From the sequence record MW460245.1: a stretch of 64,000 nt of DNA; one strand, written 5' to 3'. Of the stretch, positions 22,908 through 62,034 are shown piece after piece. The translations under genes and the position numbers were made by a program. Numbering within the stretch: position 1 is the first letter of the stretch; every line of letters starts with the position of its first letter. Under the pieces are notes generated by a model. That model had not been told where the DNA came from, made no database searches, and saw only the letters and a list, made by a program, of their open reading frames with translations.

Positions 22908-23012
22908 CGCATCACCGATCTTTAGGTTCACCGAATTCAAGAGTGCCAACGTAGTAAAGGTCTGTACCAACCGTAGTTCATAACTTCAATCCTTTCCAGG
23001 AACTTTTCATCA

Positions 23013-26000
23013 ATGCAAAAGACTCAAGTTTCCATCCTCGTCGCTTCCCTGTTCGCAGCAGCCGGTGTCAACGCAGCAGGTTCGCTCCAATTCGTGGATC
23101 GTGGCAATCCGAACCAGATCGCGAAGGACTGCATCGACGGCAAGTCGGGTAGCGGTTGCGTCGGTACGCGCAGCAGCGGTTACGTGGCAGTGTCGACCGC
23201 ATCCCCGATTCTGCAGGGCAATGGTGCAGTCGGCGGTACGGGTGGCATCGCGATCGGTGATCGTGCGAACGCGAACAAGGACAACAAGGGCACCGGCGAC
23301 AACAACGGCGGCGCAATGGCGATCGGCGTGGCAGCGCAAGCAATCAACAACAGCGCGATGGCGATCGGTACGGCAGCAGTCGCAACCGGCAACACGGCAA
23401 TCGCGATGGGTCGTCAGTCGGCAGCAACCGGCGAGTTCTCGATGGCGATGGGCAACGTCGCGAACGCAACGGGCGACCGCAGCGTGGCAATTGGTCACTC
23501 GGCGAACGCAGTCGGCGTGCAGTCGGTGGCGATCGGCAACTCGGCAGGTGGTGCCAATGACGGCGTGTCGCAAGGCGCGTCCTACGATGCAGCGACGCAG
23601 ACCCGTTCGGTCGGTGCGCGTAGCGTGGCAATCGGTGCGAATGCACAAACGACCGGCGATGACCAGATCGCGATCGGCAACGGCGCACGCGGCATGACCT
23701 CGGTGGCTGGCAAGGCAGCGTTCTCGAACGAAGCTGTGGCAGCAACTGGTGCGGTTTCGTTCGGCGATCCGAAGGGCACGGGTGTGCAGCGCCAGATCAA
23801 GGGCATCGCCGGTGCAACGGACGGCAACGACGCCGTGAACCTGAACCAGCTGACGGCCGTGAACAGCAGCCTGAGCACGTCGATCGGTGCAGTCGATCAA
23901 CGCGTTACGACGGTGGACAATCGCGTCACGACCGTTTCGAACTCGCTGTCCACGTCGATCAACACGACGAACCAGAACGTGACGAATCTGAGCACGTCGG
24001 TGGACAGCAGCGTGAAGTCGCTCAACACGTCGATCACCAACGTGGACAACCGCGTCACGAACATGGGCGCATCGCTGTCGACCTCGATCAGCAACATCGA
24101 TGGCCGTGTGACGGTGAACGAAGGCAACATCACGAATCTGCAGGCAGCGGACAAGCTGAACGTGAAGTACGATTCGCTGTCGAAGGACAAGGTCACGCTG
24201 GGCGGTGCGAACGGCACGGTGCTGTCGAACGTGAAGGCCGGCACGGCTGATACCGATGCTGTGAACGTCGGTCAACTGAACGGCAAGCTGGCGCCGATCA
24301 ACACGTCGATCACCAACATCAACACGTCGCTTTCGACGGCAACGTCCAACATCACCAACCTGCAAGGTGACGTGAAGAACCTCAGCACGACGGTCGGCGG
24401 TCACACCACGCAGATCAACAACCTGAGTACGTCGCTGAACACGACGAACCAGAACGTGTCGAACCTGACGAACGTGGTCAACGGTCATACGACCGACATC
24501 GGCGCGCTGCAAGAAGCCGACAAGCGCAACGTGAAGTACGATGGCGCCTCGGGCTTCGACAGCGTTACGCTGGCCGGCGGCAAGAACGGCACGAAGGTGA
24601 CCAACGTGGCAGACGGCGCGCTGACCGCAACGTCGAAGGACGCAGTGAACGGCTCGCAGCTCTACGCGACGAACCAGAACCTGACGAACCTCGGCGACAC
24701 GGTGAACCAGATCGATGGTCGCGTGACGAAGGTGGAAGGCAACATCACCAGCATCGGCGACAAGGTGACGAACATCGACAACTCGGTGAACGGCCTGAAG
24801 CAAGACGCCCTCCAGTGGAACAGCACGATGGGCGCCTATGATGCATCGCATGGTTCGGGTGAAGCGCAGAAGATCACGAACGTCGCCGACGGCAAGGTCG
24901 CAGCAGGCAGCAAGGACGCGATCAACGGCGGTCAGCTCTATGACGCGGTGAAGGACGGCGTGTCGAACGGCACGAAGAATGCGGTTCAGTACGACGGTGA
25001 CGACCACACGAAGGTCACGCTGGGCGGTGTCGGTGGTACGACCATCACCAACGTCAAGGCAGGTGAACTGTCGGCAACGTCGAAGGACGCAGTGAACGGC
25101 TCGCAGCTCTTCGAAACGAACACCAACGTTTTGAATCTGGATGGCCGTGTGACTAACATCGATGGCCGTGTCACGAACCTGGACGGCCGTGTGACGAAGG
25201 TCGAAGGTGACGTCACCAACGTCATCAACGGCGAAGTCGGTCTGGTGCAGCAGCATGGTGCTCGCAACCCGATCACGGTCGGCAAGGACACGCTCGGCGG
25301 CGTCGTGAAGTTCAACAATGCTGACGGCGAGACGCGCACGCTGGCAGGTGTGACGGCTGGTGTGGCTGACACGGACGCGGTGAACGTCAAGCAACTGACG
25401 ACAGCAACCGGCAACCTGCAGAACCAAATCAACGTGCAAGGCGACACTATCGTCAAGCATGGCGATACGCTGGTGCAGCAAGGCAACGCGATCACCAACC
25501 TGAACACGAGCGTTACGAACCTTGGTGACAAGGTCACGAACATCGATGGCCGTGTGACGACGAACACGACGAACATCCAGGCACTCCAGCAAGACGCTCT
25601 GCAGTTCAACAAGACCGTCGGGGCCTACGATGCGACGCGTGGCGGCAACGCAACGAAGATCACGGGCGTGGCAGCAGGTAACGTCAACGCAACCAGCACC
25701 GACGCGATCAACGGCTCGCAGCTCTACGCGACCGAGCAGAAGATCAAGGACGGCATCGCTGGTGACATGAAGAATGTGGTCAAGTACACGGACGACACGC
25801 ACGCTGGCATTGCGCTGGACGGCAAGGGCGGTACGAAGATCACCAACGTTCGCGCTGGTACGCTGTCGAACACCAGCACGGACGCGGTGAACGGCTCGCA
25901 ACTGTTCGCAACGAACAATGCAGTTACGAACCTCGATCAACGCGTGACCAAGAACGAGACGAGCATCACCAATCTCGACAACTCGGTCAATGGTCTGAAG

Positions 26001-26798
26001 CAGGATGCTTTGCTGTGGAACAAGGACCTCGGTGCATTCGATGCTTCGCACGGTGGTGTTGCTTCCAAGATCACCAACGTGGCTGACGGTGCGGTCAACG
26101 CTGACTCGAAGGACGCTGTCAACGGCAGCCAGCTGTACAAGTCGATCCAGAATGCTGGTAACCAGTTCGGTTACATCAAATACGACCAGCATGTCGACGG
26201 TTCGATCAACTACGGCAGCATCACGCTGGGTGGTGGTCAAGGTGGTCTGACGCAGATCCACAACGTCGCCGATGGTGTGGCTCCGACTGATGCTGTCAAC
26301 GTTCGTCAGATGGAACAGCATGTGAAGGTCGTCTCGCAAGAGACGGTCAAGAACTACTGGAACGACCACAAGGATGAGCTGAAGGGTGATAAGGGCGACA
26401 CCGGCGCAGCGGGTCCGCAAGGTCCGAAGGGCGACGATGGTGCAGCAGGCCCGGCAGGTCCGAACCAACCGGCACCTCTTCCGGAAGGTCTGGCAACGCA
26501 AGACGATCTGGGCAAGGTGCAGCGTGACCTGAACGGTCTGCGTGGCGATATGAGCGCGCTCAAGAAGGACATGAACGCAGGTATCGCATCGGCGATGGCT
26601 GTTGCATCGCTCCCGCAACCGAACCGTCCGGGCGAAAACATGGTCGCACTGGGCACGGCAACGTACCAGGGCGCACAAGGTTTCGCGATCGGCATCTCGC
26701 GTGTCACGTCGAACGATAAGTGGGTCATCAAGGGTGCAGTGACGACCAACACGCGTGGTGCGTTCGGTGCAGCACTTGGCGCTGGCTACAAGTTCTAA
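23013..26798 (+). CDS. YadA-family trimeric autotransporter adhesin
   Basis: Signal peptide; YadA head repeats (AMAIG/SVAIG..A.A); neck motifs DAVN..QL; stalk coiled coils; C-terminal anchor GIASAMAVASLPQ...GAGYKF. Confidence 0.95.
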   Translation: MQKTQVSILVASLFAAAGVNAAGSLQFVDRGNPNQIAKDCIDGKSGSGCVGTRSSGYVAVSTASPILQGNGAVGGTGGIAIGDRANANKDNKGTGDNNGGAMAIGVAAQAINNSAMAIGTAAVATGNTAIAMGRQSAATGEFSMAMGNVANATGDRSVAIGHSANAVGVQSVAIGNSAGGANDGVSQGASYDAATQTRSVGARSVAIGANAQTTGDDQIAIGNGARGMTSVAGKAAFSNEAVAATGAVSFGDPKGTGVQRQIKGIAGATDGNDAVNLNQLTAVNSSLSTSIGAVDQRVTTVDNRVTTVSNSLSTSINTTNQNVTNLSTSVDSSVKSLNTSITNVDNRVTNMGASLSTSISNIDGRVTVNEGNITNLQAADKLNVKYDSLSKDKVTLGGANGTVLSNVKAGTADTDAVNVGQLNGKLAPINTSITNINTSLSTATSNITNLQGDVKNLSTTVGGHTTQINNLSTSLNTTNQNVSNLTNVVNGHTTDIGALQEADKRNVKYDGASGFDSVTLAGGKNGTKVTNVADGALTATSKDAVNGSQLYATNQNLTNLGDTVNQIDGRVTKVEGNITSIGDKVTNIDNSVNGLKQDALQWNSTMGAYDASHGSGEAQKITNVADGKVAAGSKDAINGGQLYDAVKDGVSNGTKNAVQYDGDDHTKVTLGGVGGTTITNVKAGELSATSKDAVNGSQLFETNTNVLNLDGRVTNIDGRVTNLDGRVTKVEGDVTNVINGEVGLVQQHGARNPITVGKDTLGGVVKFNNADGETRTLAGVTAGVADTDAVNVKQLTTATGNLQNQINVQGDTIVKHGDTLVQQGNAITNLNTSVTNLGDKVTNIDGRVTTNTTNIQALQQDALQFNKTVGAYDATRGGNATKITGVAAGNVNATSTDAINGSQLYATEQKIKDGIAGDMKNVVKYTDDTHAGIALDGKGGTKITNVRAGTLSNTSTDAVNGSQLFATNNAVTNLDQRVTKNETSITNLDNSVNGLKQDALLWNKDLGAFDASHGGVASKITNVADGAVNADSKDAVNGSQLYKSIQNAGNQFGYIKYDQHVDGSINYGSITLGGGQGGLTQIHNVADGVAPTDAVNVRQMEQHVKVVSQETVKNYWNDHKDELKGDKGDTGAAGPQGPKGDDGAAGPAGPNQPAPLPEGLATQDDLGKVQRDLNGLRGDMSALKKDMNAGIASAMAVASLPQPNRPGENMVALGTATYQGAQGFAIGISRVTSNDKWVIKGAVTTNTRGAFGAALGAGYKF
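24627..25110 (+). repeat. intragenic 37-bp exact direct repeat in the autotransporter stalk
   Basis: GCAACGTCGAAGGACGCAGTGAACGGCTCGCAGCTCT at 24627-24663 and 25074-25110. Confidence 0.85.
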
Positions 26799-26822
26799 GG
26801 CAGTAAAGTAAGTGCAGCATTC

Positions 26823-26902
26823 GGGAGGGCTTCGGCCCTCTCCTTCGTCGCGTGACGAGCACACCCCAAAGGGCGGCCCGTCATCGTACAGGTCGCCCTT
26901 TT
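26823..26902 (+). terminator. two tandem hairpin terminators
   Basis: GGAGGGC-TTCG-GCCCTC.. at 26823-26843 and GGGCGGCC-loop-GGTCGCCC-TTTT at 26871-26902. Confidence 0.65.
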
Positions 26903-52371: not shown

Positions 52372-52402
52372 AAAAGGCCCGGTCATTGCGATCGGGCCTT
52401 TT
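52372..52402. terminator. bidirectional rho-independent terminator
   Basis: AAAAGGCCCG-loop-CGGGCCTTTT. Confidence 0.8.
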
Positions 52403-52470
52403 CCTTTTGCCTGACGGGATCGCGTGCTTTCGAATTTCAATACTAGAAGTTCGACCCTTTTGGAGTTCAT

Positions 52471-54204
52471 ATGCTCAGTCCTTTGATGGAAGAATTGGCG
52501 GTGCAGCAACCGCCTCAATCGGTGTTTGCTACAGCCGATGAAGCTGTAATGGTAACGGCGAGCCCCCTCGTTAGCCTCATCGAAGCGTGCTACCTGCTTG
52601 TCATCGACTACTTGGAGATGCCGAACAAGCCGGCATTGCCTGATACAGCAGCTGAGATCAAGAAGGTTCTTCCCAAAGCCGTGAAGGTATTCGGTAAGGA
52701 CACTCCTGCTCTGAAGGACAGCGCCGTTGCTGCTATCAGCGGTCGCAGCAAGGCAGAACAGCTTGCGCTCCTCGGTACCGAGATCAAGGATGCGCTGCCT
52801 GTCTACTCCCAGGAAAAGTTCGGCTTCTCGCACGAGGAACTGGAGGTGCTTAAGAGTCTTGCGCACTACCTGCGTACCGATTCGGAGGTAGCACTCAACA
52901 AAATCAAGAAGTATGCGGCAATCACGCGCAACACCTTCATCACGTCCAAGCTGACGCCGAAGGAAGGTTCGCAGAGCGGCGTGCGTTCCCAGCTGGAAGG
53001 TCTTGTGTCTCAGCTGGTTGGCCGCAAGGACGCAGCCCTGACGCCTGAGGAAAGCGCGGTCATCAAGGAGACGCATCCGGAGGCTCACAAGCAATACCTG
53101 GCCCTCCGTCGGAACTTCAACCAAGTCTGGAAGGACTTCGTTGTAGCGTACATCCGCAAGAGTGGTCGTCACCTGATAGGTTACGAGGAGCTCCTCGCCG
53201 CTATGGATCAGATGGGGCTGGATCACCTGCTGTCGAGGGGCTTCACTGGACAGATCGATGACCTGGGACGGCTCTATACGGTCAACGACGAGCTCATCGA
53301 CGGCGCACCGAACGCGGTTACGTTCCCCTCTGTCGTGATGAACAAGGCTTACGGCAAGCCGGGTGGTGGTGACTGGATCATGAAGGCTATTCGTGCAGAC
53401 GGCACGGACGGCCCCTATTACTACACCAGCACCTTCAAGAAAGGGCAGGCGAAGGCAAAGTTCGAACGTGTGGCCTTGTTCTCGAACAAGATCGATGGCA
53501 TGCGGAAGAAATGGTTCGCTGAGGTCAAGAAGTTCGATCCGGAGAACATCAAAAGCGTGTGTGCGGTGATCCTCGAGATCCTGTACACCTTCAGTGCTCG
53601 CGTAGGCTCAGCCAAGAACGCCACAGAAGGTTCGCCGACCTTCGGCATCTCGACGTTGCTGGTGAAGCACGTCAAGGTCGATCCGAACGGCAACTACCTG
53701 CTGACCTACAAAGGTAAGGGTGGCGTGGCAACGAAGCACCGCATCATGAAGACTGATCCAGAGCTCAAGTTCGTCGCGAAGGCCCTGGACTTCCTCATCG
53801 CAGACAAGGCTCCGAACGAGCCAGTGTTCACCATTCCGTCGAACCGCGGCTATTCGCTGGTAGGTGCGGCGAAGGTCAACGCGTACTTCAAGGCTCTAGG
53901 CGCTGGTGACGTTACGGTGCACAAGCTCAGAACGCTTCGTGGTACGCGCCTGTTCCAGGAACTGAGCCAGAAGTATCACGACACTGGCAAGCGTCCACGC
54001 AACGACAAGGAAGCACTGGCCATCCTCAACAAAATGGCTATGGAAGTCGGTAAGGCCTTGAACCACGTGCGAAACACCGCAGCTGGTACGAAGGTCACAG
54101 GGGCAACGGCTCTCGCCAACTATATCGACCCGACGTGCGTGGTTGAATTGTTCCGATCCTGGGATTTAAGGCCGCCAAAATTTCTTGCCCGTTTTGATGT
54201 GTGA
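52471..54204 (+). CDS. type IB DNA topoisomerase with long N-terminal extension
   Basis: Catalytic set ARVG (R), YKGK (K), HKLRT (R), LNH, ANYIDP (Y). Confidence 0.85.
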   Translation: MLSPLMEELAVQQPPQSVFATADEAVMVTASPLVSLIEACYLLVIDYLEMPNKPALPDTAAEIKKVLPKAVKVFGKDTPALKDSAVAAISGRSKAEQLALLGTEIKDALPVYSQEKFGFSHEELEVLKSLAHYLRTDSEVALNKIKKYAAITRNTFITSKLTPKEGSQSGVRSQLEGLVSQLVGRKDAALTPEESAVIKETHPEAHKQYLALRRNFNQVWKDFVVAYIRKSGRHLIGYEELLAAMDQMGLDHLLSRGFTGQIDDLGRLYTVNDELIDGAPNAVTFPSVVMNKAYGKPGGGDWIMKAIRADGTDGPYYYTSTFKKGQAKAKFERVALFSNKIDGMRKKWFAEVKKFDPENIKSVCAVILEILYTFSARVGSAKNATEGSPTFGISTLLVKHVKVDPNGNYLLTYKGKGGVATKHRIMKTDPELKFVAKALDFLIADKAPNEPVFTIPSNRGYSLVGAAKVNAYFKALGAGDVTVHKLRTLRGTRLFQELSQKYHDTGKRPRNDKEALAILNKMAMEVGKALNHVRNTAAGTKVTGATALANYIDPTCVVELFRSWDLRPPKFLARFDV

Positions 54205-55075
54205 CGATTACTACTGCTATGTCTTGCTAGACCCACGAAAACCAGGAAAGTTCAAGTACGGTTCCCTGGTGTTCAACCACGAACCTTTCTACGTGGGTAA
54301 AGGCAAACGGCGTCGGTGCACCTCCCATATCCGTTCTGCAAAGAAAGGTAAATGTTTGGACGGTAACCGACATAAATTCAACAAGATTCGAAGCATTCTT
54401 CGTGCGGGCTCGGAGGTAATAGTCCAGAAGTCGGCTAATACCTCAACCGAGGAACGTGCGCTGGCAGCAGAGCAGCGTATGATACGCGCTATTGGTCGTT
54501 CTGATCTTGGCGAAGGGCCGCTGACAAACCTTAGCGACGGTGGCGAGGATCAGGCTAACCTTAGCGAAAAGGTTCGGCGTAAGATTGCTCGCACCTCCAA
54601 AAGGAATTGGAATGCTTTAACAGACGAGGAGAAGGCACAGTTTTCTGCCAGTGTCGGTAAGGCTGCAAAAGCTGCGTGGGAAGCCTGCTCAGAAACAGAA
54701 AAGGCTAAACGCATTGCTAAGGCAAAGGCCGGTATTCACGCTATGTCACCCGAAGCAAAAGTGGCAGCAGGCAAACGTAAGAGCAAAGGGTTGAAACAGT
54801 ATTGGTCAGAGTTATCTGAAAGTGAGCGGTCTAAGGTTCTAGCTGCACGTCGGGCTGGAAAAACTGAAGAGTCACGTCGGCAGCAGTCAGAGCAACACAA
54901 AGGCTGGAATGCCCGACGCTCTCCAGAAGAACAAGCCCTCACCTCTAAAAGGATGACAAAAGCCTGGAAGAACCGTAAGCCTAAGACCTGCCCTCATTGC
55001 GATACCTCTAGTGTCAACTACGCCAATCTGACTCGCTGGCACTTCGACAACTGCAAGCATCGGAGAAAGAAATGA
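54197..55075 (+). mobile_element. free-standing GIY-YIG-family homing endonuclease
   Basis: YCYVLLDPR...PFYVGKG...R...H, E..A...EQ..I, LTNLSDGGE, basic helical repeats, C-terminal CPHC...RWHFDNCK; more AT-rich codons; overlaps the topoisomerase stop. Confidence 0.8.
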
Positions 55076-55203
55076 AAGTTCCGCGCCTCACAACTGCTGA
55101 GAAATGGTTCCTTGCTGTAGTCTTGGTCATGGCCACTACGTCAGCAGGCTCGAACAGCACCACGCCGCAGAAGGCACATCAACAGAGTGCTCAGACCAAA
55201 TGA
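55072..55203 (+). CDS. 43-aa ORF with signal-peptide-like N-terminus (not in ORF track)
   Basis: ATGA overlaps at both ends; MKVPRLTTAEKWFLAVVLVMA... Confidence 0.45.
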   Translation: MKVPRLTTAEKWFLAVVLVMATTSAGSNSTTPQKAHQQSAQTK

Positions 55204-56549
55204 CAGTTCTCCAAATGAAAATCCCATTCGACCTCAAGGCGTACTTGGTCGAGGCGGCACGGGCCGATGAGAAGCAAGCCTTCGAGTTCCTGAAGGCCAA
55301 TGGTTTCACCGGCCTTGTGCGCAAGAAGGACATCGAGAACCGAATGACGTTCGGTTACAAGGACTTCAACGCCCGACACCTGACGCAATACCTCGGTGCG
55401 CCAAAGGCTGGCGCCTCTGCCATTACCTGGAACGTAGGGAAGGCCGGCACGCTGACTGTCTTCCCGAAACGTAAGATCGTTGCCCTCATCAACAAGGGTG
55501 GTGCCGGCAGCCAAATGCCTGACATCAAGCCGATCGACACGCACGTTCCTGAAGAGCACGATGCTCCGGAAACACCGGCACCACGCACACCGAAGGCACC
55601 GAAAGTTCCGGTTAAGAAGCCTGCACCTCCCACGCCTCCGCAACAGCCTGAAAAGAAACTCCCGCCTGCGCTGGATCCGAATGTTCCGGGTGCGAAGGAT
55701 AACGACGATGCAGGTGTGCCGCATGTCGCCGTCCCTGCCAACCTCATCAAGCAATACGAGTGGGCACAGGACGATCCGCAGAATACGGCATTTCGCCTGA
55801 AGTTCATGAAGGCCCTGTGGCAGCACTTCAATGCGGCGAAATTCCATGGTGCTCTGCAGGAACCGCGATTCGGCCTGATGAAGAATATGGCAGCGCATAA
55901 GATGCGTGTTCGTGGTCGTTGGTGGCCTCTCTACCACAGGTTGGAAATGGCACCGCGTATCTTCAACGCCTCGCCAGCCTTCTTCTTCGAAATCTTCCTG
56001 CATGAAATGTGCCATCAGGCGGTCACGCAGGTCGATAAGATGGACAACGATCCGCATGAGCGTGCTAACAAGGGTCACGGCCGTTACTGGCAGGCGTGGA
56101 TGAAGAAGGTCGGCCTGAACCCCTCGCGGTTCGATCCGAACGACAACTCCACGTACCTGAACAAGGAAGAGCGGGAAGCGCACGACAAGAAGCTCCAGAA
56201 GCTGGAGCAGGACAAGGCAGCAGTGAAGCTGGAACCGATGCACGTCTCAACACGTAGCGCGGGTCAGGAAGTGACGGTTCAGTGGAACAACGAGCTACTG
56301 CACGGTCTGACTGCAGGTGAAGGCAAGAAAGGCGCGCTCGCATTCGTGGACTACAAGGAACCCTATGGTACAGGGTTCAAGCTGGTTAGACCTCAGAACA
56401 TATTCAAGTATGTTGGTCCCCAGCAACCTGAGAACGTGAAGCTTGCGGCTGAGGAGAAGGTCAAGAAGATCCTGGCCTACTACCAGCAGAAGAAAGAGAT
56501 GCGGCAGATCAATCGCCTGATTCGTCAGCGCGACCGCTATGGCTTCTAA
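55200..56549 (+). CDS. SprT-like zinc metalloprotease, multidomain
   Basis: F..FN...F...L..P, HEMCH (HExxH), GHGRYWQAWM..VG; Pro/Lys-rich linker. Confidence 0.85.
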   Translation: MTVLQMKIPFDLKAYLVEAARADEKQAFEFLKANGFTGLVRKKDIENRMTFGYKDFNARHLTQYLGAPKAGASAITWNVGKAGTLTVFPKRKIVALINKGGAGSQMPDIKPIDTHVPEEHDAPETPAPRTPKAPKVPVKKPAPPTPPQQPEKKLPPALDPNVPGAKDNDDAGVPHVAVPANLIKQYEWAQDDPQNTAFRLKFMKALWQHFNAAKFHGALQEPRFGLMKNMAAHKMRVRGRWWPLYHRLEMAPRIFNASPAFFFEIFLHEMCHQAVTQVDKMDNDPHERANKGHGRYWQAWMKKVGLNPSRFDPNDNSTYLNKEEREAHDKKLQKLEQDKAAVKLEPMHVSTRSAGQEVTVQWNNELLHGLTAGEGKKGALAFVDYKEPYGTGFKLVRPQNIFKYVGPQQPENVKLAAEEKVKKILAYYQQKKEMRQINRLIRQRDRYGF

Positions 56550-56558
56550 GGAGTGATA

Positions 56559-58103
56559 ATGAGAACAAAGGCCGGCAGCACTACGCAGCCGGTCCTTAAT
56601 CCAGCCGGCAAGGATCTGGATCTAAAGGACCTTGAGAAGGACTTCATGTGGGGCGTGCCTCAGAACACGCCCTCTTTCCACGCTGCAAAGCCTAACAACG
56701 TGACCAACAAGAGCGTGTTCATCATGCTCTACTGCACAGGGACAGGTCGCTATCTCTTCTGCCGTCGTTCGGAAGAAGTTGACGCCCCTCACACCTGGAG
56801 TTTCTTTGGTGGCGGCGTGGACGCAGGTGAGAACCTGAAGCAGGCAGCAGTGCGCGAGCTCTTAGAGGAGGGTCAGCTTTCCTTCAATCCGCACATGAGC
56901 GTCGACCTGTTCGCTCTGAAGAAGGATGGTCATACCTTCTACACCATCCTCGGCTTCGTACCGAATGAAGAGACTCCCGTCCTCAATTGGGAGAACGATG
57001 CCTTCAAATGGGTCAAGTACGGCCGGTGGCCTGCGCCTCTGCACCCTGGCGTTACGCGGATGTTCGCGAACCCGAAGGTGTTGCAGAAGATTCGCCAGTT
57101 CGCCAGCACGAATGTTGAGACGCGTGCAGCTATCACCGCAGCGCTAAAGGTGACCGCGAAGGAAGGTGAATGGTTCTACAGCATGCCTCCAGAGATGCAG
57201 AAGCAATACGTGGAAGAGCATCCGGATAGCAAATACGCCAAGGACTACAAGGCGAAGCAGGATCAGAAAAAGCTGCCTGCACCGAAGAAGGAGAAACCTG
57301 ACGCTGAGGACGTGAAGTTCAAGGAACGTCAGGAACCTCCTGGGCGTCCGAAGCCAAAGCAATCCATCGTGCAGAAGTCTTTGAAGTCCATCGCCAAGCT
57401 CCCCAAGCAACTCCAGCAATTCGTGAAGACCGGCGGTACTAAGGCTTCCAGCGCAGCACGGAAGGTTACTGGCAATGCTGTTGTGAAAGGTAGCGCTAAG
57501 GTAACCAAAGGTATGCTCAAGGATACTGCAGGCGTTCTGAAGGGTGCCAATAGCGTTGCGCATAGCCTCACAGGCGGCGGCACGCGTGATGACTGGAAAG
57601 CCGCTGCAAAGCTTGGCATGACCATCCTTGCTTCAGGTGCTCTGGCCTCTGCATTCGCAGCCTCAGGTCCTGCTGGCTTCATGGCTCTGATGGCTCTGAA
57701 ACACATCGGTGCACCTGCGATGGGCAACATCGTAAAGAGCGCCTGGAAGAGCATCACGGAGCCTTCCGATGAACCTGTGAAGTACGAAAGCAGCCCTGGA
57801 TGGCAGCAGGCGGGCCATGAGGGTGTCAGTCAGTACGGCTACTGGAAGGATCGCAACACCTGGGTCAACGAGACCAAGGAGGAGTGGGAAGCCGCCTACG
57901 AGGAGCGTGAGGAGTCTGCTGACGAATTCAAACCTGTAGGTGCAGCTACGGTAGCTGATGGTAAGGCTGTGTCACCTGAGCAATTCATCGAGGCAATCGT
58001 CAAACAACTCGGTGAAGTCGCTGCGAATGGTTACATCGATGACGAAACCTGGGCTAAGGCAATCGAACAGGCAGGTCAACAAGGCAACAAGGAGGCAGAA
58101 TGA
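56559..58103 (+). CDS. Nudix hydrolase domain fused to large extra domains (possible virion protein)
   Basis: GGGVDAGENLKQAAVRELLEEG perfect Nudix box; WEND.F.W...P.PLHPG; later Lys-rich and hydrophobic regions. Confidence 0.85.
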   Translation: MRTKAGSTTQPVLNPAGKDLDLKDLEKDFMWGVPQNTPSFHAAKPNNVTNKSVFIMLYCTGTGRYLFCRRSEEVDAPHTWSFFGGGVDAGENLKQAAVRELLEEGQLSFNPHMSVDLFALKKDGHTFYTILGFVPNEETPVLNWENDAFKWVKYGRWPAPLHPGVTRMFANPKVLQKIRQFASTNVETRAAITAALKVTAKEGEWFYSMPPEMQKQYVEEHPDSKYAKDYKAKQDQKKLPAPKKEKPDAEDVKFKERQEPPGRPKPKQSIVQKSLKSIAKLPKQLQQFVKTGGTKASSAARKVTGNAVVKGSAKVTKGMLKDTAGVLKGANSVAHSLTGGGTRDDWKAAAKLGMTILASGALASAFAASGPAGFMALMALKHIGAPAMGNIVKSAWKSITEPSDEPVKYESSPGWQQAGHEGVSQYGYWKDRNTWVNETKEEWEAAYEEREESADEFKPVGAATVADGKAVSPEQFIEAIVKQLGEVAANGYIDDETWAKAIEQAGQQGNKEAE

Positions 58104-58732
58104 GTTTCTTGCGATACTGGCGGTATCCGTTCTACGTGATGTTGGACCTGGTATTCCTGTTCCTCACGGTCGTAGTCTTCAACTGGTGGATCGTTTTCTT
58201 CACCGTGTCGGCTGACAACAACGAGTACCTGAAACGCAAGGGCTATCGTAATTGCGAGATGCTACCTTGGTGGCTCAAGTGGTTCGATACCTTTGACGCT
58301 TCGACCGACGAGTACTGGTACGGGAACTACTACAACGAGGACAAGTCAGTGCCTAACCCCTACGGTCCGGACAACCCTCCGCCGTTCTGGCTACGCAAGT
58401 GGTACCAGATCAAATGGCTGTACCGCAATCCGATGTACGGCTTCTCGTACTGGGTGACCGGCATCAAGTTCGACGCTTCACAATGGGACTACCTGTACGA
58501 TCCAGTGACCAAAGAATTTCATGCACATGACAGCAGTGGTCACTTCACGATCATGAAGGATGGACTCCTCACTCAGAAGCTAGGGTGGAAGACGTGGGGT
58601 TACTTCGATAACGCGAACCTGCAGTGGCGTGAAGGCTGGTCATGGGGTCCTGAAATGCGTGCGCCTCTCGGCTTTACACCGCTGATGGGTCGCAATCTGT
58701 CCAACATATGGAAGAAACTCTTCGGAGGCTGA
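58100..58732 (+). CDS. conserved-type phage membrane-associated protein
   Basis: N-terminal TM; LPWWLKWFDT.D...D, WLYRNPMYGF motif. Confidence 0.75.
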   Translation: MSFLRYWRYPFYVMLDLVFLFLTVVVFNWWIVFFTVSADNNEYLKRKGYRNCEMLPWWLKWFDTFDASTDEYWYGNYYNEDKSVPNPYGPDNPPPFWLRKWYQIKWLYRNPMYGFSYWVTGIKFDASQWDYLYDPVTKEFHAHDSSGHFTIMKDGLLTQKLGWKTWGYFDNANLQWREGWSWGPEMRAPLGFTPLMGRNLSNIWKKLFGG

Positions 58733-58733
58733 A

Positions 58734-59366
58734 ATGCCGAGTAACCAAATTAAGCACGACGTGAAGGAAGGAAAAGGGACTAAGAAGTCCTTGGAAAAGA
58801 AGTGGAACCGTGCCGAAAAGATCGGCAAGAAGGGTGCGAAGGACAAGAAGAATCCGTGGCCGCTGGTACAGCACATCTACCAGAACATGCGTGATTCGAA
58901 GAAGGCTAGTGTTCAGGCTGGCACTCGCCTTCAATTGAGTGCAGCTCTTGCCTGCGCAGGCTGCGGTCTGGTAGCTTGCGACTGCGATCCGAACTCGACG
59001 ATTCAGCCTACCAGCACGCCGAATGACCGTGAACCTGCTATCTTCGTTGGTGAGGCGGATGACATCGCAGCTCCCGGCTATCGTGGCTACAGTGGTGAAT
59101 CTGAGACAGACATCGGTGGTCCGAAAGAGTTGATGGCGGATACCTTCGAAGGCTTCATCAACAGCCTGCAGTTCGACTATGACCGCCCTGATGGCGCCAA
59201 CTTCGTCATCGTTGACGCGCCTGTATCGCAGGTTCACCAGAAGCTCATAGACTTCGGTTGGGGCATGGCGAAGCGTAACGACAAGCACATCATGGCGAAA
59301 GGTCAGCACTCTGTAGAGCTACAGAAGGCTGACGGTGGCCGCACCAAGATCATCGACGTTGCCTGA
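58734..59366 (+). CDS. hypothetical protein with Lys-rich N-domain
   Basis: Internal VQAGTRLQL (58911-58937), then CAGC...CDC. Confidence 0.75.
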   Translation: MPSNQIKHDVKEGKGTKKSLEKKWNRAEKIGKKGAKDKKNPWPLVQHIYQNMRDSKKASVQAGTRLQLSAALACAGCGLVACDCDPNSTIQPTSTPNDREPAIFVGEADDIAAPGYRGYSGESETDIGGPKELMADTFEGFINSLQFDYDRPDGANFVIVDAPVSQVHQKLIDFGWGMAKRNDKHIMAKGQHSVELQKADGGRTKIIDVA

Positions 59367-59373
59367 GGACATC

Positions 59374-59676
59374 ATGAGAATCGAAGCAGCAAAGCGCCTG
59401 AAGGCAGACACGAATCCGGACGAACTCATCGTAGGTGACGAGCGGATCGACAAGATCAAGGACGCTATGCACCTGATCGACCGCACTATGAAGGTGCCGA
59501 TGGAGGAACTGGATGGTGCGCACGTTCTGGTCGAATTTCAAGGTAAGGCAGAAGCAGACCTCGGGGCGGCAGACCTTCGCCGTCTCGAGACTGTTGTGTC
59601 CATGACGAAGGCTAGGTTCTCCATCCGTTGTGAGGGTGGGAAGCTGGTCTACACCTTCGAACTCGACCGACACTAA
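59374..59676 (+). CDS. hypothetical protein with MRIEAAKRLKA N-terminus
   Basis: GAGGA RBS. Confidence 0.8.
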   Translation: MRIEAAKRLKADTNPDELIVGDERIDKIKDAMHLIDRTMKVPMEELDGAHVLVEFQGKAEADLGAADLRRLETVVSMTKARFSIRCEGGKLVYTFELDRH

Positions 59677-59677
59677 G

Positions 59678-60046
59678 ATGAAGATTCAAGCAGCCACACG
59701 CCTCAAAGCCTACCAGCTCATCGCCAAAGAACAGGTTGAGAGCATCACTGTCGAAGGTCTTGCGACGTCCCTCCTGAAGAAGTTCGGTGGGGACCTGACG
59801 GAAAAGAAGCACAATGGCACTCAGTTGACCTATGGTATCGATATCCGAGGCGAGGACATGCGCCCGAAGATTGTCGAATTCCTGGATCGCCTGGGTCTGT
59901 CCCGCGTAGGTAAGATGAACGGTATCATCGATGTCTACCCTCGCCGTTACGTAAGCTCTCGAATCAAGATTGTACGCCTCACCTACGAAAGTGGTGACGT
60001 GTGCATCGAGATCCAAGGCACCCTCGACATGATCCAACAAGGTTAA
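59678..60046 (+). CDS. hypothetical protein with MKIQAATRLKA N-terminus
   Basis: Starts 1 bp after the upstream stop. Confidence 0.8.
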   Translation: MKIQAATRLKAYQLIAKEQVESITVEGLATSLLKKFGGDLTEKKHNGTQLTYGIDIRGEDMRPKIVEFLDRLGLSRVGKMNGIIDVYPRRYVSSRIKIVRLTYESGDVCIEIQGTLDMIQQG

Positions 60047-60057
60047 AGGAAACCTCA

Positions 60058-60549
60058 ATGAAGATCGAAGCAGCCGCACGCCTTCAGGCGTCTCATCTTC
60101 TGGAAGCTGACGCACACGATGAGCTGAGTGCCCTGTATGGCCTCTACCAGAACCGCATGAAGGGGAAAGGTAAGCCATCCAAGATGGGCCAGTGGCAAGA
60201 AGTTTCGTGGCACCTCGGTAACAACCGTGGTAAGTTCCTCGAGTTCGCTGTCACGTACAACACGAAGACCGGCGAGATCGCACTGGTCTACCACGGTCTT
60301 CTCGGTGACGTGAAGGCAAAGGGCACTGACGCTAAGAAGATCCAAAAGGACTTCGAACGTCAGGCGAACAAGTGGCTCAACAGCGGTGACGCCTCGACCG
60401 AGGATCGTGAGAACCTCGACAAGGTCCTTGGTAAGGCAGCCCACCACTACGATGAAGACGATGAGGACGAACTCGATCGTCGCGGTGGCGGTGGCCGTGC
60501 AGGTCCCGCATCGCGGCGCAAAGGTCTTGGCGGCCGTGGCCGCTGGTAA
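60058..60549 (+). CDS. hypothetical protein with MKIEAAARLQA N-terminus and acidic/RGG tail
   Basis: AAAGGA RBS; ends DEDDEDELDRRGGGGRAG...GGRGRW. Confidence 0.8.
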   Translation: MKIEAAARLQASHLLEADAHDELSALYGLYQNRMKGKGKPSKMGQWQEVSWHLGNNRGKFLEFAVTYNTKTGEIALVYHGLLGDVKAKGTDAKKIQKDFERQANKWLNSGDASTEDRENLDKVLGKAAHHYDEDDEDELDRRGGGGRAGPASRRKGLGGRGRW

Positions 60550-60559
60550 AGCTTAAGCA

Positions 60560-60566
60560 GTAAATA
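60560..60566 (+). promoter_or_regulatory. putative late promoter
   Basis: CAGTAAATAG intergenic. Confidence 0.5.
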
Positions 60567-60595
60567 GGGTGCATGATCCACTCGCCAATAGTGTC

Positions 60596-61105
60596 ATGCA
60601 CTCTATTCATCCATACCTCACTCCCGTAATCTCAGAAGCAAGCGAGAAGCAACGCCGGTACGATCAGCTCTACATGGACATCGCTCTCCGCTGCTCTGAC
60701 GAATCAGTAGACAAACGCCGCCGCGTCGGTGCAGTTGTTGTCAAAGACAATAGCATCGTGGCCTGGGGCTTCAACGGCACACCTGCCAACACACCCAATG
60801 AATGTGAACAGTACGCCCTTTCGCGCCTTAATCCTTGCAACCCTGATAGCACTCTGTGGTTCAAAGGTAATAGCAAGCCAACCGTGCTTCACGCAGAGAA
60901 GAACGCTCTGCTCAAGCTGGCCCGCTCATCTTATTCTGCTGTAGGCACGACGCTCTATTGTACCGACTGCTGCTGTCTTGCCTGCGCCCTAGATTGGGCA
61001 GCGGCAGGAGCCAAGGAGCTTGTGTACCAATACCCGTATCGCCTTGAGGACGGTCTCGACCATCTCCGACAGCAAGGCGTAACAGTTCGTTTCCTCGGAG
61101 GTTAA
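60596..61105 (+). CDS. dCMP/cytidine deaminase family protein
   Basis: VGAVVV, GFNGTP, HAEKNAL, LYCT..CC..C Zn ligands; start could be 60569. Confidence 0.9.
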   Translation: MHSIHPYLTPVISEASEKQRRYDQLYMDIALRCSDESVDKRRRVGAVVVKDNSIVAWGFNGTPANTPNECEQYALSRLNPCNPDSTLWFKGNSKPTVLHAEKNALLKLARSSYSAVGTTLYCTDCCCLACALDWAAAGAKELVYQYPYRLEDGLDHLRQQGVTVRFLGG

Positions 61106-61106
61106 C

Positions 61107-61700
61107 ATGGCTCATGAAGAAACTGCAACTCAGCTTATTCCAAAACTTGATGATACGCTCCACCAGTTTGTCATCAAGAAGCTGAAAGAGAAAATCAAGA
61201 AAGATCCGACACCATGGTCTACCTGGCGTAGCTCTCACATCTATTGGTTCGGTGATACCAGTACTGGCTATTACTGTCTCGAACATGAAGGTGACATCCT
61301 GTATTTCGTGCGGTACAAAGCCATTAAGGCAAATAAAATGCGCTTCGGTCGGCAGATTCTTGTGTGGCGGAACCGAACCTTAAAGGGTTCAGAAAGCGCA
61401 GGCTTTGCTAAGGAGATTTTCTTTAACGTGCTTCTGCCGAAGTTTAAGGCGCTCATTGCCGATCAGGAGCAAACACAGGATGGTATGGCATTCTGGCAGC
61501 ACGCCCTTTCTGAGGCCATTAACCAATCTTACCGATTCCATTCGTACTTCCTTGATCGTCGCGCTACTCCTAACGTACTGCACGAGATTCAGTCCTACGC
61601 GGACGTTTTGAAGTATGACAAGGAACTATGGGGTACCTCTGAGGGTCATCGTCGAACCTTCGCTGTTATCTCAACAGTGCCTTTGGAAATTAAGGCCTAA
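61107..61700 (+). CDS. hypothetical protein, possible GNAT-like fold
   Basis: GGAGG RBS; GFAKEIF...LIADQEQTQDG..FW pattern; more AT-rich codons. Confidence 0.7.
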   Translation: MAHEETATQLIPKLDDTLHQFVIKKLKEKIKKDPTPWSTWRSSHIYWFGDTSTGYYCLEHEGDILYFVRYKAIKANKMRFGRQILVWRNRTLKGSESAGFAKEIFFNVLLPKFKALIADQEQTQDGMAFWQHALSEAINQSYRFHSYFLDRRATPNVLHEIQSYADVLKYDKELWGTSEGHRRTFAVISTVPLEIKA

Positions 61701-61718
61701 CCTTAGGAGCACCCCCTC

Positions 61719-62003
61719 ATGTATCAGATTGACCCTCGACCGATGAAGCCGCACGATGTCGTCATTCAGCACGGCCTCCAACTTCTCTTGGAGCGGTTCG
61801 CCAAAATACCGGAAGGTATGTCGCGTGATGTCTACGGCAGTTCGGTGGTAGTCTATAACAAGAAGAGGACTATCAACGTCAAGGTGCAAGCCGATGGGCA
61901 CCTATTCGTGGATCGCAAGGTCAAAGGTCAATGGAAATCGCATAAAGAGAAGTGCGATTCGGTAGATGAGGCGTGTGACAAGGCATTCGAGTTCCTGAAT
62001 TGA
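61719..62003 (+). CDS. hypothetical phage protein
   Basis: AGGAG RBS. Confidence 0.75.
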   Translation: MYQIDPRPMKPHDVVIQHGLQLLLERFAKIPEGMSRDVYGSSVVVYNKKRTINVKVQADGHLFVDRKVKGQWKSHKEKCDSVDEACDKAFEFLN

Positions 62004-62009
62004 CTGACA

Positions 62010-62034
62010 GCCGCCTACGGGCGGTTTCTCCTTT
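62010..62034 (+). terminator. rho-independent terminator
   Basis: GCCGCC-TACG-GGCGGT-TTCTCCTTTT. Confidence 0.65.

What the first reader, a model, noticed from the sequence alone, without database searches (positions are those of the whole stretch)
58734..60549. Shared MKIxAAxRLxA leader on consecutive unrelated proteins: candidate capsid-targeting/processing signal
Seen: three adjacent proteins with otherwise dissimilar sequences start MRIEAAKRLKA (59374), MKIQAATRLKA (59678) and MKIEAAARLQA (60058). The gene before them has an internal VQAGTRLQL right after a Lys-rich N-domain. Looser xTAA/EAAR segments occur at domain borders in ORFs 55200, 56559 and 63339. Established: T4 internal proteins share a 10-aa capsid targeting sequence removed by the prohead protease. 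Inference: an analogous portable signal loads a set of cargo proteins into the head for injection with the DNA, potentially useful for protein delivery.
Basis: partly seen in the sequence, partly recalled or inferred. Interest (0 to 1): 0.72.

Follow-up and report, generated by a model that had tools for sequence, protein, structure and literature searches.

The report
Portable N-terminal leader on phage proteins
A short 11-residue leader is shared by many otherwise unrelated late proteins of the jumbo Burkholderia phage BCSR5 and its relatives, and it most likely works as a docking signal that loads cargo proteins into the phage head, although nobody has shown this directly.

Summary
The window is Burkholderia phage BCSR5 (record 62001-126000). 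Three adjacent genes start with the leader (3 pattern matches, 0 in 100 shuffles). The whole genome has 8 strong N-terminal copies, at least 3 divergent ones and internal copies. All lie in the late/structural half. Third codon positions vary freely, so selection acts on the peptide. With the leader removed, the proteins are unrelated: 33 groups from 43 proteins, hhalign probability at most 1.4% within the trio. The leader heads an ADP-ribosyltransferase, a DEDD exonuclease, a homospermidine-synthase-like enzyme, DUF3175 and SprT-like proteins in relatives. Each lineage (BCSR5-like, RSL1, Motura, Sauron) has its own variant on all its copies, which points to one co-evolving partner. In three of the lineages sampled a tagged gene sits right after the prohead protease, and a Glu-containing cleavage-type motif is enriched just after the leader. 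Best reading: a T4-CTS-like head-targeting and processing signal (about 0.5). The general claim of a portable docking peptide is about 0.85. No virion proteome or cleavage data exist, so packaging is inferred.

The parts
59374..59676 (+). QRE00248, 100 aa. Leader MRIEAAKRLKA at 59374-59406; acidic body.
   Evidence: Ortholog with leader in L044. Body unrelated to its neighbours.
59678..60046 (+). QRE00249, 122 aa. Leader MKIQAATRLKA at 59678-59710, followed by a compact alpha/beta body.
   Evidence: One homolog cluster in 1.84 billion representatives, and it keeps the leader. In the AF2 model the body (aa 21-117) has pLDDT 82-94 and the leader (aa 1-20) about 46, so the leader is not packed. 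No PDB fold match.
60058..60549 (+). QRE00250, 163 aa. Leader MKIEAAARLQA at 60058-60090, then LLE-A; Gly/Arg-rich basic C-terminal tail.
   Evidence: ORFan in 5.8 billion proteins. Partial ortholog with leader in L044.
58734..59366 (+). QRE00247, 210 aa. Lys-rich N-domain followed by an internal leader-like motif VQAGTRLQL (58911-58937).
   Evidence: Orthologs RSL1 ORF112 and L044:602-1264 carry the motif at the same place.
55200..56549 (+). QRE00244, SprT-like domain protein. Its N-terminus (MKIPFDLKA) is a decayed leader.
   Evidence: Pfam SprT-like. Orthologs in L008, L009, L015 and L031 begin with the leader.
56559..58103 (+). QRE00245, a NUDIX domain fused in front of a leader-bearing module. 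The internal leader-like ITAALKVTAKE lies at about 57132-57164.
   Evidence: Pfam NUDIX. BLASTP to the leader+WW module of the tagged protein L027:434-1144, E 2e-5.
52372..62026 (+). Probable transcription unit holding the tagged genes: topoisomerase IB, SprT-like, NUDIX, DUF7338, QRE00247, the trio, dCMP deaminase. It is bracketed by two terminator-like hairpins.
   Evidence: hairpins at 52372-52402 and 62009-62026; domains. The consensus scan is weak evidence.

Best explanation
The leader is a short linear docking peptide. In BCSR5 its core is I-x-A-A-x-R-L-x-A, usually directly after Met-Lys. A common phage-encoded partner recognises it during head assembly.

Proteins that carry it are a changing set of small ORFan proteins plus enzymes such as an ADP-ribosyltransferase, an exonuclease and SprT-like proteins. 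They are made late and are recruited through the leader into the assembling prohead core, next to the acidic scaffold-like protein and the prohead protease. In many cases the leader is then clipped at a nearby Glu by that protease, as in the T4 capsid targeting sequence. The cargo would then travel with the DNA into the next host.

Shown: the leader is real, portable, under peptide-level selection, phage-specific, confined to late/structural modules, and co-varies by lineage.

Inferred: the partner, the location in the head, the cleavage and the injection.
For: 1. Chance is excluded.
- 3 matches in the window against 0 in 100 shuffles.
- 7 strict and 8 HMM hits of 24-29 bits in the 227-kb genome, with the next hit at 12.9 bits.
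- 1 hit in 596 Gb of bacterial and archaeal genomes, which is the chance level by my own estimate of about 0.8 expected. By contrast there are 21 matches in IMG/VR and further hits in soil metagenomes, often 2-5 per contig.

2. Selection is on the peptide. Codon positions 1 and 2 are conserved at 0.86 and 0.92, position 3 at 0.64. All synonymous Ile, Ala and Leu codons are used, and the upstream DNA is not conserved.

3. The leader is portable.
- 43 tagged proteins fall into 33 unrelated groups once the leader is removed.
- hhalign on the trio's bodies gives 0.1-1.4% probability.
- Pfam domains start about 10 residues after the leader in RNase_T, saccharopine dehydrogenase/HSS-like, DUF3175 and ADP-ribosyltransferase proteins.
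- The RSL1 ortholog ORF125 lacks the extension that BCSR5 QRE00263 carries.

4. The leaders evolve in concert.
- Orthologs carry the leader in the form typical of their own genome. QRE00265 and RSL1 ORF126 are one such pair.
- Motura has at least 15 genes with an I-Q-A-x-x-R-L-x-A form.
- L043 has copies preceded by one or two extra residues.

5. The context is head-related.
- 0 of 204 CDS before QRE00248 are tagged against 11 of 111 after it (p = 7e-6).
- The order prohead protease, tagged gene, acidic scaffold-like protein, MCP recurs in BCSR5, in BCSR5-like contigs, in RSL1 and in L043.

6. There is a processing hint.
- [AGS]-x-E lies within aa 10-25 in 17 of 31 strict-leader proteins, against 13% of control ORFs (p = 2.6e-7) and 5 of 31 further downstream in the same proteins.
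- MCP N-termini end in A-[AS]-[ST]-E before [FY]-[RK]-F.
- Related giant-phage and T4 proteases cut after Glu (PMC5694885).

7. There are precedents.
- T4 internal proteins share only a CTS (PMC3012670).
- T4 Alt, an ADP-ribosyltransferase, is packaged and has its propeptide removed (PMC5694885).
- The N-terminal 30 residues of P1 DarB act as a packaging signal (PMC9024508).

8. In the AF2 model of QRE00249 the leader is a low-confidence, unpacked extension on a confident domain.
Against: - No virion proteome, N-terminal sequencing or structure for BCSR5, RSL1, Motura or Sauron could be read. Presence in the head and cleavage are therefore untested.
- The leader has no sequence relation to T4 CTS/IP families or to any Pfam, PHROG or NCBIfam family.
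- The protease model has no PDB fold match. Only BFVD hits to proteins named prohead serine proteases support it, so specificity for Glu is borrowed from other phages.
- 14 of 31 leaders lack an [AGS]-x-E site nearby, and some have no Glu for more than 30 residues.
- Some tagged genes lie in tail modules. The one slot found tagged in BCSR5, Sauron, L041 and L043 lies between the sheath and tube genes and encodes a disordered acidic protein with several internal copies; its RSL1 counterpart carries internal copies only.
- A homospermidine-synthase-like enzyme is an odd head cargo.
- The trio is co-transcribed with nucleotide and DNA enzymes rather than with head genes.
- Sauron-like genomes have few copies and none next to the protease.
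Confidence: 0.5

Rival explanations
1. The motif is a docking peptide for a partner outside the head. Candidates are the tail or tail-tube lumen, the baseplate, or a non-virion assembly or replication complex. Tagged proteins gather there and are not packaged with the DNA.
For: - The slot found tagged in BCSR5, Sauron, L041 and L043 lies between the tail sheath and tail tube genes (BCSR5 QRE00278, Sauron gp077, L041 18433, L043 9587). Its RSL1 counterpart ORF141 has internal copies only, and no tagged gene was seen there in L014 or L042.
- Other copies lie in baseplate and fibre regions: QRE00347, QRE00325, and L019, L020 and L038.
- The motif also occurs internally and repeatedly in a disordered protein, which fits a general short linear motif.
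- Metabolic enzymes carry it.
Against: - Most copies in BCSR5, RSL1 and Motura flank the portal, protease, scaffold-like and MCP genes.
- The Glu-motif enrichment and the MCP N-terminal likeness point to the head protease.
- The ADP-ribosyltransferase cargo matches a known head-packaged enzyme class (PMC5694885).
Confidence: 0.22
2. The motif is mainly a recognition and cleavage signal for the prohead protease or another phage protease. It would time activation or removal of the proteins and would have no targeting role.
For: - [AGS]-x-E or L-L-E lies just after the leader in most BCSR5 copies, and the Glu position is conserved between ortholog pairs.
- Motif-like stretches with A-x-E occur at the N-termini of the MCP and the scaffold-like protein.
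- The alternating hydrophobic/polar pattern of the BCSR5 form would suit an extended strand in a protease cleft. This is my reading of the sequence.
Against: - Nearly half of the strict leaders lack a nearby site.
- The invariant part (I, A-A, R-L, A) lies 3-10 residues upstream of any Glu, which is long for a protease subsite.
- RSL1 has one extra residue inside the motif.
- A head protease acts inside the prohead, so substrates must get there first. That brings back targeting.
Confidence: 0.15
3. The shared start is plain homology. The tagged genes would be a fast-diverging paralog family from tandem duplication, and only the N-terminus is still recognisable.
For: - The genes are adjacent and small.
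- Several small bodies share a loose helix, Gly-aromatic, strand pattern by eye.
- True sub-families exist: the DUF3175 set, QRE00265 with RSL1 ORF126, and Motura gp174, gp175 and gp177.
Against: - The leader heads proteins of distinct curated families: ADP-ribosyltransferase, RNase_T, saccharopine dehydrogenase-like, DUF3175 and SprT-like.
- BLASTP and hhalign find nothing between the trio's bodies.
- The AF2 model shows the leader outside the folded domain.
- Orthologs exist with and without it.
Confidence: 0.04
4. The conservation is at the nucleic-acid level. It would be a translation-initiation or operator element, or a recombination site for shuffling gene cassettes.
For: - The motif sits at gene starts.
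- Two copies share an upstream ribosome-binding stretch.
- Tagged genes change place between relatives. The QRE00270 ortholog lies in the trio's locus in L044.
Against: - Third codon positions are far less conserved than first and second positions, and all synonymous codons are used.
- The upstream sequence is not conserved.
- Internal copies exist.
Confidence: 0.02

Closest known systems
T4 capsid targeting sequence (CTS) of internal proteins IPI-III and the propeptide of Alt
   Same: - A short N-terminal leader is the only thing shared by a diverse, fast-changing set of proteins.
- The phage has a prohead protease and a scaffold-like core protein next to the MCP gene.
- A Glu follows the leader.
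- The cargo set includes an ADP-ribosyltransferase (PMC3012670, PMC5694885).
   Different: - No sequence relation to T4 families.
- Encapsidation, cleavage and injection are not shown here.
- Copies also occur internally and in tail modules.
- Copy number is up to 15 or more per genome.
- The phage clade (RSL1, BCSR5, Motura, Sauron) is not T4-like in its head genes.
N-terminal packaging signal of phage P1 DarB
   Same: An N-terminal stretch directs a large enzyme into the capsid for delivery with the DNA (PMC9024508).
   Different: The P1 signal was described for one protein (30 residues), not as a motif shared by many. No sequence comparison was made here.
Propeptides of phiKZ/SPN3US head and ejection proteins, cut at [S/A/G]-x-E
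   Same: These are jumbo phages in which many head proteins are processed after Glu. Identical N-termini on diverged paralogs have been noted as CTS-like (PMC5694885). The [AGS]-x-E enrichment seen here fits.
   Different: Those propeptides are mostly longer than 100 residues and sit on paralogs. Here the leader is 11-20 residues on unrelated proteins. The protease relation is shown only at the level of BFVD fold hits.
Encapsulin cargo-loading peptides and microcompartment encapsulation peptides
   Same: Short terminal peptides on unrelated enzymes dock them to the inside of a protein shell, and encapsulin shells share the HK97 fold with phage capsids. This comparison rests on my general knowledge and was not tested.
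   Different: The sequence and the usual position differ. Those systems involve no DNA and no maturation protease. Nothing here shows binding to the MCP.

Membership tests
T4-type capsid targeting sequence | A short N-terminal leader shared by otherwise unrelated proteins of one phage | tested here: met
T4-type capsid targeting sequence | Sequence relation to T4 internal-protein/CTS families | tested here: not met
   No Pfam, PHROG or NCBIfam family matches any BCSR5 tagged protein. T4 IPI-III and Alt were the proteins in mind; no letters were used.
T4-type capsid targeting sequence | Leader removed by the prohead protease after Glu | tested here: inconclusive
   [AGS]-x-E is enriched after the leader (17 of 31 against 13%), and the Glu is conserved in ortholog pairs. 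However, 14 of 31 lack it, and no peptide data exist.
T4-type capsid targeting sequence | Cargo present inside the head and delivered with the DNA; leader sufficient for packaging | not testable with these tools
   No virion proteome of this clade was found.
T4-type capsid targeting sequence | Prohead protease and scaffold/core protein encoded beside the MCP | tested here: met
   QRE00269 matches phrog_18299 and gives BFVD fold hits to prohead serine proteases. The acidic protein QRE00271 is conserved upstream of the MCP.
phiKZ/SPN3US-type head propeptides | Protease of the T4 gp21 / phiKZ gp175 kind | tested here: inconclusive
   No PDB hit by sequence profile or by fold. BFVD hits include 'prohead core protein serine protease' at E 4e-6.
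phiKZ/SPN3US-type head propeptides | Long propeptides (over 100 aa) on paralogous head proteins | tested here: not met
   The leader is 11-20 aa and Pfam domains start at aa 22-41. The bodies are unrelated.
Tandem paralog family (simple homology) | Similarity beyond the shared start | tested here: not met
   BLASTP finds none among the 10 BCSR5 bodies. hhalign probability is at most 1.4% for the trio. The cargos have different Pfam families.
Encapsulin / microcompartment cargo peptides | Peptide binds the inner face of the shell protein | not testable with these tools
   No complex prediction is available. There is only a loose likeness between the leader and the MCP N-termini.

The most novel reading that the evidence does not exclude
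A whole clade of soil jumbo phages (RSL1, BCSR5, Motura, Sauron and many uncultivated relatives) uses one co-evolving 9-11-residue docking motif as a general address label. With it the phages load an interchangeable arsenal into the virion for delivery with the DNA. That arsenal runs to 15 or more proteins per genome and includes an ADP-ribosyltransferase, nucleases, proteases and many ORFans. If so, it is an independently evolved and much expanded counterpart of the T4 CTS, with an unknown receptor.
Probability: 0.4. Interest if true: 0.8.

Novelty: new variant of a known kind. Interest (0 to 1): 0.66.

Why it matters
If the leader is a head-loading signal, it marks the injected protein set of a large and poorly known phage clade from sequence alone. 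Dozens of ORFans and several enzymes would become candidate early-acting or anti-defence effectors.

It would also show that CTS-like addressing arose outside the T4 group.

The lineage-specific variants give a natural co-variation data set for finding the receptor.

Even if the destination is not the head, a short linear motif shared by more than 40 unrelated phage proteins is a useful annotation key. It already corrects gene starts in RSL1 and an 'endolysin' label in BCSR5.

Tried and rejected
- Protein-database search with a tagged protein to collect other leader bearers: only self was found, because the word index is too coarse for an 11-mer.
- QRE00250 has no homolog at all in that database.
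- tblastn of QRE00250 against GenBank phages: only self.
- Literature search for the motif letters: no paper.
- RSL1 virion papers (Virology 2010, Structure 2013) are not held. A search by RSL1 ORF numbers gave only unrelated papers.
- The Matilda preprint has infection proteomics but no virion proteome.
- Protease against PDB by sequence profile and by fold: nothing.
- QRE00249 body against PDB by fold: best E 0.012, not informative.
- Pfam on ten Motura tagged proteins: nothing.
- PaBG, a distant relative with a published virion gel proteome, has no comparable shared leader in its head region, so its data could not be transferred.
- The idea that the leader is a regular amphipathic helix was dropped. 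The Ile-to-Leu spacing is 6 in BCSR5 and 7 in RSL1, which does not fit one regular structure.
- The idea that the MCP N-terminus is a true copy of the leader is kept only as a loose likeness.
Full report
**Identity of the window.** Window 56000-62000 is 100% identical to Burkholderia phage BCSR5 (MW460245.1, 227,351 bp) at 118000-124000. Window coordinate plus 62000 therefore gives the record coordinate. BCSR5 is an unclassified jumbo myovirus (PMC12388082). Its major capsid protein is 73% identical to BcepSauron/Saruman, 67% to Ralstonia phage RSL1 and 60% to Achromobacter phage Motura. More distant relatives include PaBG and several Erwinia and Xanthomonas jumbo phages.

**The observation.**
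- A back-translated pattern matches three times in the window and never in 100 shuffles.
- No other six-frame match exists in the window.
- The internal VQAGTRLQL in QRE00247 is there.

**Extension to the whole genome.** I read the rest of the public record in slices and joined them unchanged in a scratch file for scanning. I made no edits and built no consensus.
- The strict pattern occurs at seven gene starts: the trio plus QRE00265, 270, 325 and 347.
- QRE00256 carries MKIMAASRLRA.
- A leader HMM gives these eight 24-29 bits. The next hit, at 12.9 bits, is an internal site in the scaffold-like QRE00271.
- Divergent N-terminal forms are on QRE00260, QRE00263 and QRE00278.
- In a blind comparison of all Met-started 12-mers, this is the only multi-member N-terminal cluster in the genome. 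The other shared starts are ordinary paralog pairs.
- None of the 204 CDS before QRE00248 is tagged, against 11 of the 111 after it (p = 7e-6).

**Peptide or nucleic acid.** Across the eight copies, codon positions 1 and 2 are conserved at 0.86 and 0.92 and position 3 at 0.64. Ile uses ATC, ATT and ATA. Ala uses all four codons. Leu uses CTG, CTC and CTT. The 30 bases upstream are not conserved. The selection is on the peptide.

**Paralogs or portable module.**
- With the first 14 residues removed, the 43 tagged proteins collected fall into 33 BLASTP-unrelated groups. No two BCSR5 bodies match.
- Profile comparisons of the trio's bodies, each paired with its ortholog, give probabilities of 0.3%, 0.1% and 1.4%.
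- The leader heads proteins of different curated families:
  - an RNase_T-type exonuclease, domain from aa 24;
  - a saccharopine-dehydrogenase/homospermidine-synthase-like enzyme, domain from aa 22;
  - DUF3175 proteins, including BCSR5 QRE00325;
  - an ADP-ribosyltransferase, PF03496, E 2.6e-24;
  - SprT-like proteins, the orthologs of window gene QRE00244.
- BCSR5 QRE00263 has a leader-like extension of about 20 residues that its RSL1 ortholog ORF125 lacks.
- QRE00245 is a NUDIX domain fused in front of a leader-bearing module.
- The AF2 model of QRE00249 has a confident alpha/beta body and a low-confidence, unpacked leader.

**Distribution.**
- The pattern has one match in 596 Gb of bacterial and archaeal genomes. 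I estimate about 0.8 expected by chance.
- It has 21 matches on about nine IMG/VR contigs and further hits in soil metagenomes, often several per contig.
- These contigs are BCSR5-like (MCP about 72% identical) and syntenic.
- A 2.9-kb contig (L044) is the counterpart of the finding's own locus. Its gene order is:
  - the end of a NUDIX gene;
  - a tagged 86-aa gene;
  - the QRE00247 ortholog, with the internal motif;
  - the QRE00248 ortholog;
  - a tagged Dabb-like gene;
  - the QRE00270 ortholog, which in BCSR5 lies after the protease;
  - the QRE00249 ortholog;
  - the QRE00250 ortholog.
- In the same slot, other relatives hold tagged genes with different bodies (L013, L035). The locus is therefore hypervariable in content and constant in its leader.

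**Lineage-specific forms.**
- RSL1 has no BCSR5-type copy. It has a variant with one extra residue (for example MYEIKAAVDRLKATEV) on ORF123, 124, 126, 127 and 133 and inside ORF112, with looser forms on ORF111, 117 and 120.
- Orthologs carry the form of their own genome. QRE00265, RSL1 ORF126 and L014_7333 are one such set. QRE00260, RSL1 ORF120 and Sauron gp091 are another.
- Motura has at least 15 genes around its portal that start with an I-Q-A-x-x-R-L-x-A form.
- A 219-kb MAG contig (L043) has three tagged genes in a row after its protease, with one or two extra residues before the motif.
- Sauron and a Sauron-like contig have few copies.
- Many unrelated proteins changing the same motif together within a genome is what a shared binding partner predicts.

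**Context.**
- QRE00269 is labelled endolysin, but the evidence says it is the prohead protease. It is 62% identical to RSL1 ORF132. It matches phrog_18299 at E 4e-81. Its AF2 model (pLDDT above 90 for aa 105-322) matches BFVD proteins named prohead serine protease, although nothing in the PDB.
- A tagged small gene follows the protease in BCSR5, in the BCSR5-like contigs, in RSL1 and in L043. An acidic scaffold-like protein, a virion protein and the MCP come next.
- This does not hold in Sauron, L041 or L042.
- Other tagged slots flank the portal.
- One slot is tagged across BCSR5, Sauron, L041 and L043. It lies between the sheath and tube genes and encodes a disordered acidic protein with several motif copies, some internal. 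Its RSL1 counterpart ORF141 has internal copies only.
- The motif is thus a short linear motif with a strong N-terminal preference.
- The trio itself lies in a probable unit bracketed by hairpins at 52372 and 62009, together with topoisomerase IB, SprT-like, NUDIX and dCMP deaminase genes.

**Processing.**
- An [AGS]-x-E site lies within aa 10-25 in 17 of 31 strict-leader proteins, against 13% of control ORFs (p = 2.6e-7) and 5 of 31 further down the same proteins. In 28 of 31 there is a Glu by residue 27.
- Ortholog pairs keep the Glu at nearly the same place.
- MCP N-termini in all lineages end in A-[AS]-[ST]-E before [FY]-[RK]-F near residue 20.
- The scaffold-like proteins start with K-V-x-A-A-x-E or a close variant of it.
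- T4, phiKZ, 201phi2-1 and SPN3US proteases all cut after Glu, and T4 CTS leaders are 10-20 residues long (PMC5694885).
- PaBG virion proteins are processed (PMC7412058).
- Cleavage in BCSR5 is inferred, not shown.

**Comparison with known systems.**
- The closest match in logic is the T4 CTS. T4 internal proteins are a diverse set with only the CTS in common (PMC3012670). Alt, an ADP-ribosyltransferase, is also packaged and trimmed (PMC5694885).
- P1 DarB has a 30-residue N-terminal packaging signal (PMC9024508).
- The leader is not a sequence member of any described family, and no paper holds the motif.
- I therefore file it as a new variant of a known kind. Confidence that it is a portable docking peptide is high, about 0.85. 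Confidence that its destination is the head, with clipping by the prohead protease, is about 0.5.

**Limits and disclosures.**
- Only 40-50 kb of RSL1, Sauron, Motura and PaBG were read.
- The hhalign profiles are shallow (two sequences each).
- The control set for the Glu-motif test includes some non-coding ORFs.
- The second leader HMM included the RSL1 copies it later scored.
- In my reasoning I once recalled from memory a few letters of the T4 capsid targeting sequence.

Noticed in passing
L004:13231-14223 (BCSR5 record 139231-140223): QRE00269 is annotated 'endolysin' but is the prohead maturation protease. It is 62% identical to RSL1 ORF132, matches phrog_18299 at E 4e-81, and gives BFVD fold hits to prohead serine proteases. 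It has about 100 disordered N-terminal residues.
   Followed up: yes
L027:434-1147 (soil metagenome contig Ga0137409_10343268): An intact ADP-ribosyltransferase (PF03496, E 2.6e-24) carries the leader. Another tagged 66-aa gene lies just upstream (227-427).
   Followed up: partly
L046 (Motura NC_049849.1 112000-152000): At least 15 genes around the portal, plus one after the tail tube, start with a third leader variant (I-Q-A-x-x-R-L-x-A). Some are large (378 and 556 aa). Pfam finds nothing in ten of them.
   Followed up: partly
L022 (RSL1 record 60166-77828): The leader suggests different start codons for RSL1 ORF126 (69428 rather than 69491), ORF133 (77367 rather than 77328) and ORF111 (an internal Met).
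   Followed up: partly
window 52471-54204: A eukaryotic-type topoisomerase IB (PF01028, E 1.6e-21) heads the probable transcription unit that contains the tagged trio. The same gene order is kept in RSL1.
   Followed up: no
L004:22011-22748 (BCSR5 QRE00278); L022:35101-36132 (RSL1 ORF141): The gene between tail sheath and tail tube encodes a long, acidic, apparently disordered protein with several leader-like motifs and a conserved C-terminal end. Its role is unknown.
   Followed up: partly
L004:3762-5092 (BCSR5 QRE00261 and QRE00262): Two adjacent PKD-domain proteins share an identical N-terminus of about 36 residues. They are plain paralogs and unrelated to the leader.
   Followed up: no
window 56553-58103: The NUDIX protein QRE00245 has a C-terminal extension of about 320 residues. 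By eye it holds an Ala/Gly-rich hydrophobic stretch that looks membrane-spanning. No family was found for the extension.
   Followed up: no
window 23010-26864: A 1261-aa ORF on the + strand is mirrored by a 1284-aa ORF on the - strand. The second is probably a shadow ORF of a repeat-rich gene.
   Followed up: no
L045 (PaBG NC_022096.1 40001-80000): PaBG has no shared leader in its head region. Its MCP and its scaffold-like protein both carry S-(x)-L-E-D near residue 20, a possible common protease site.
   Followed up: no
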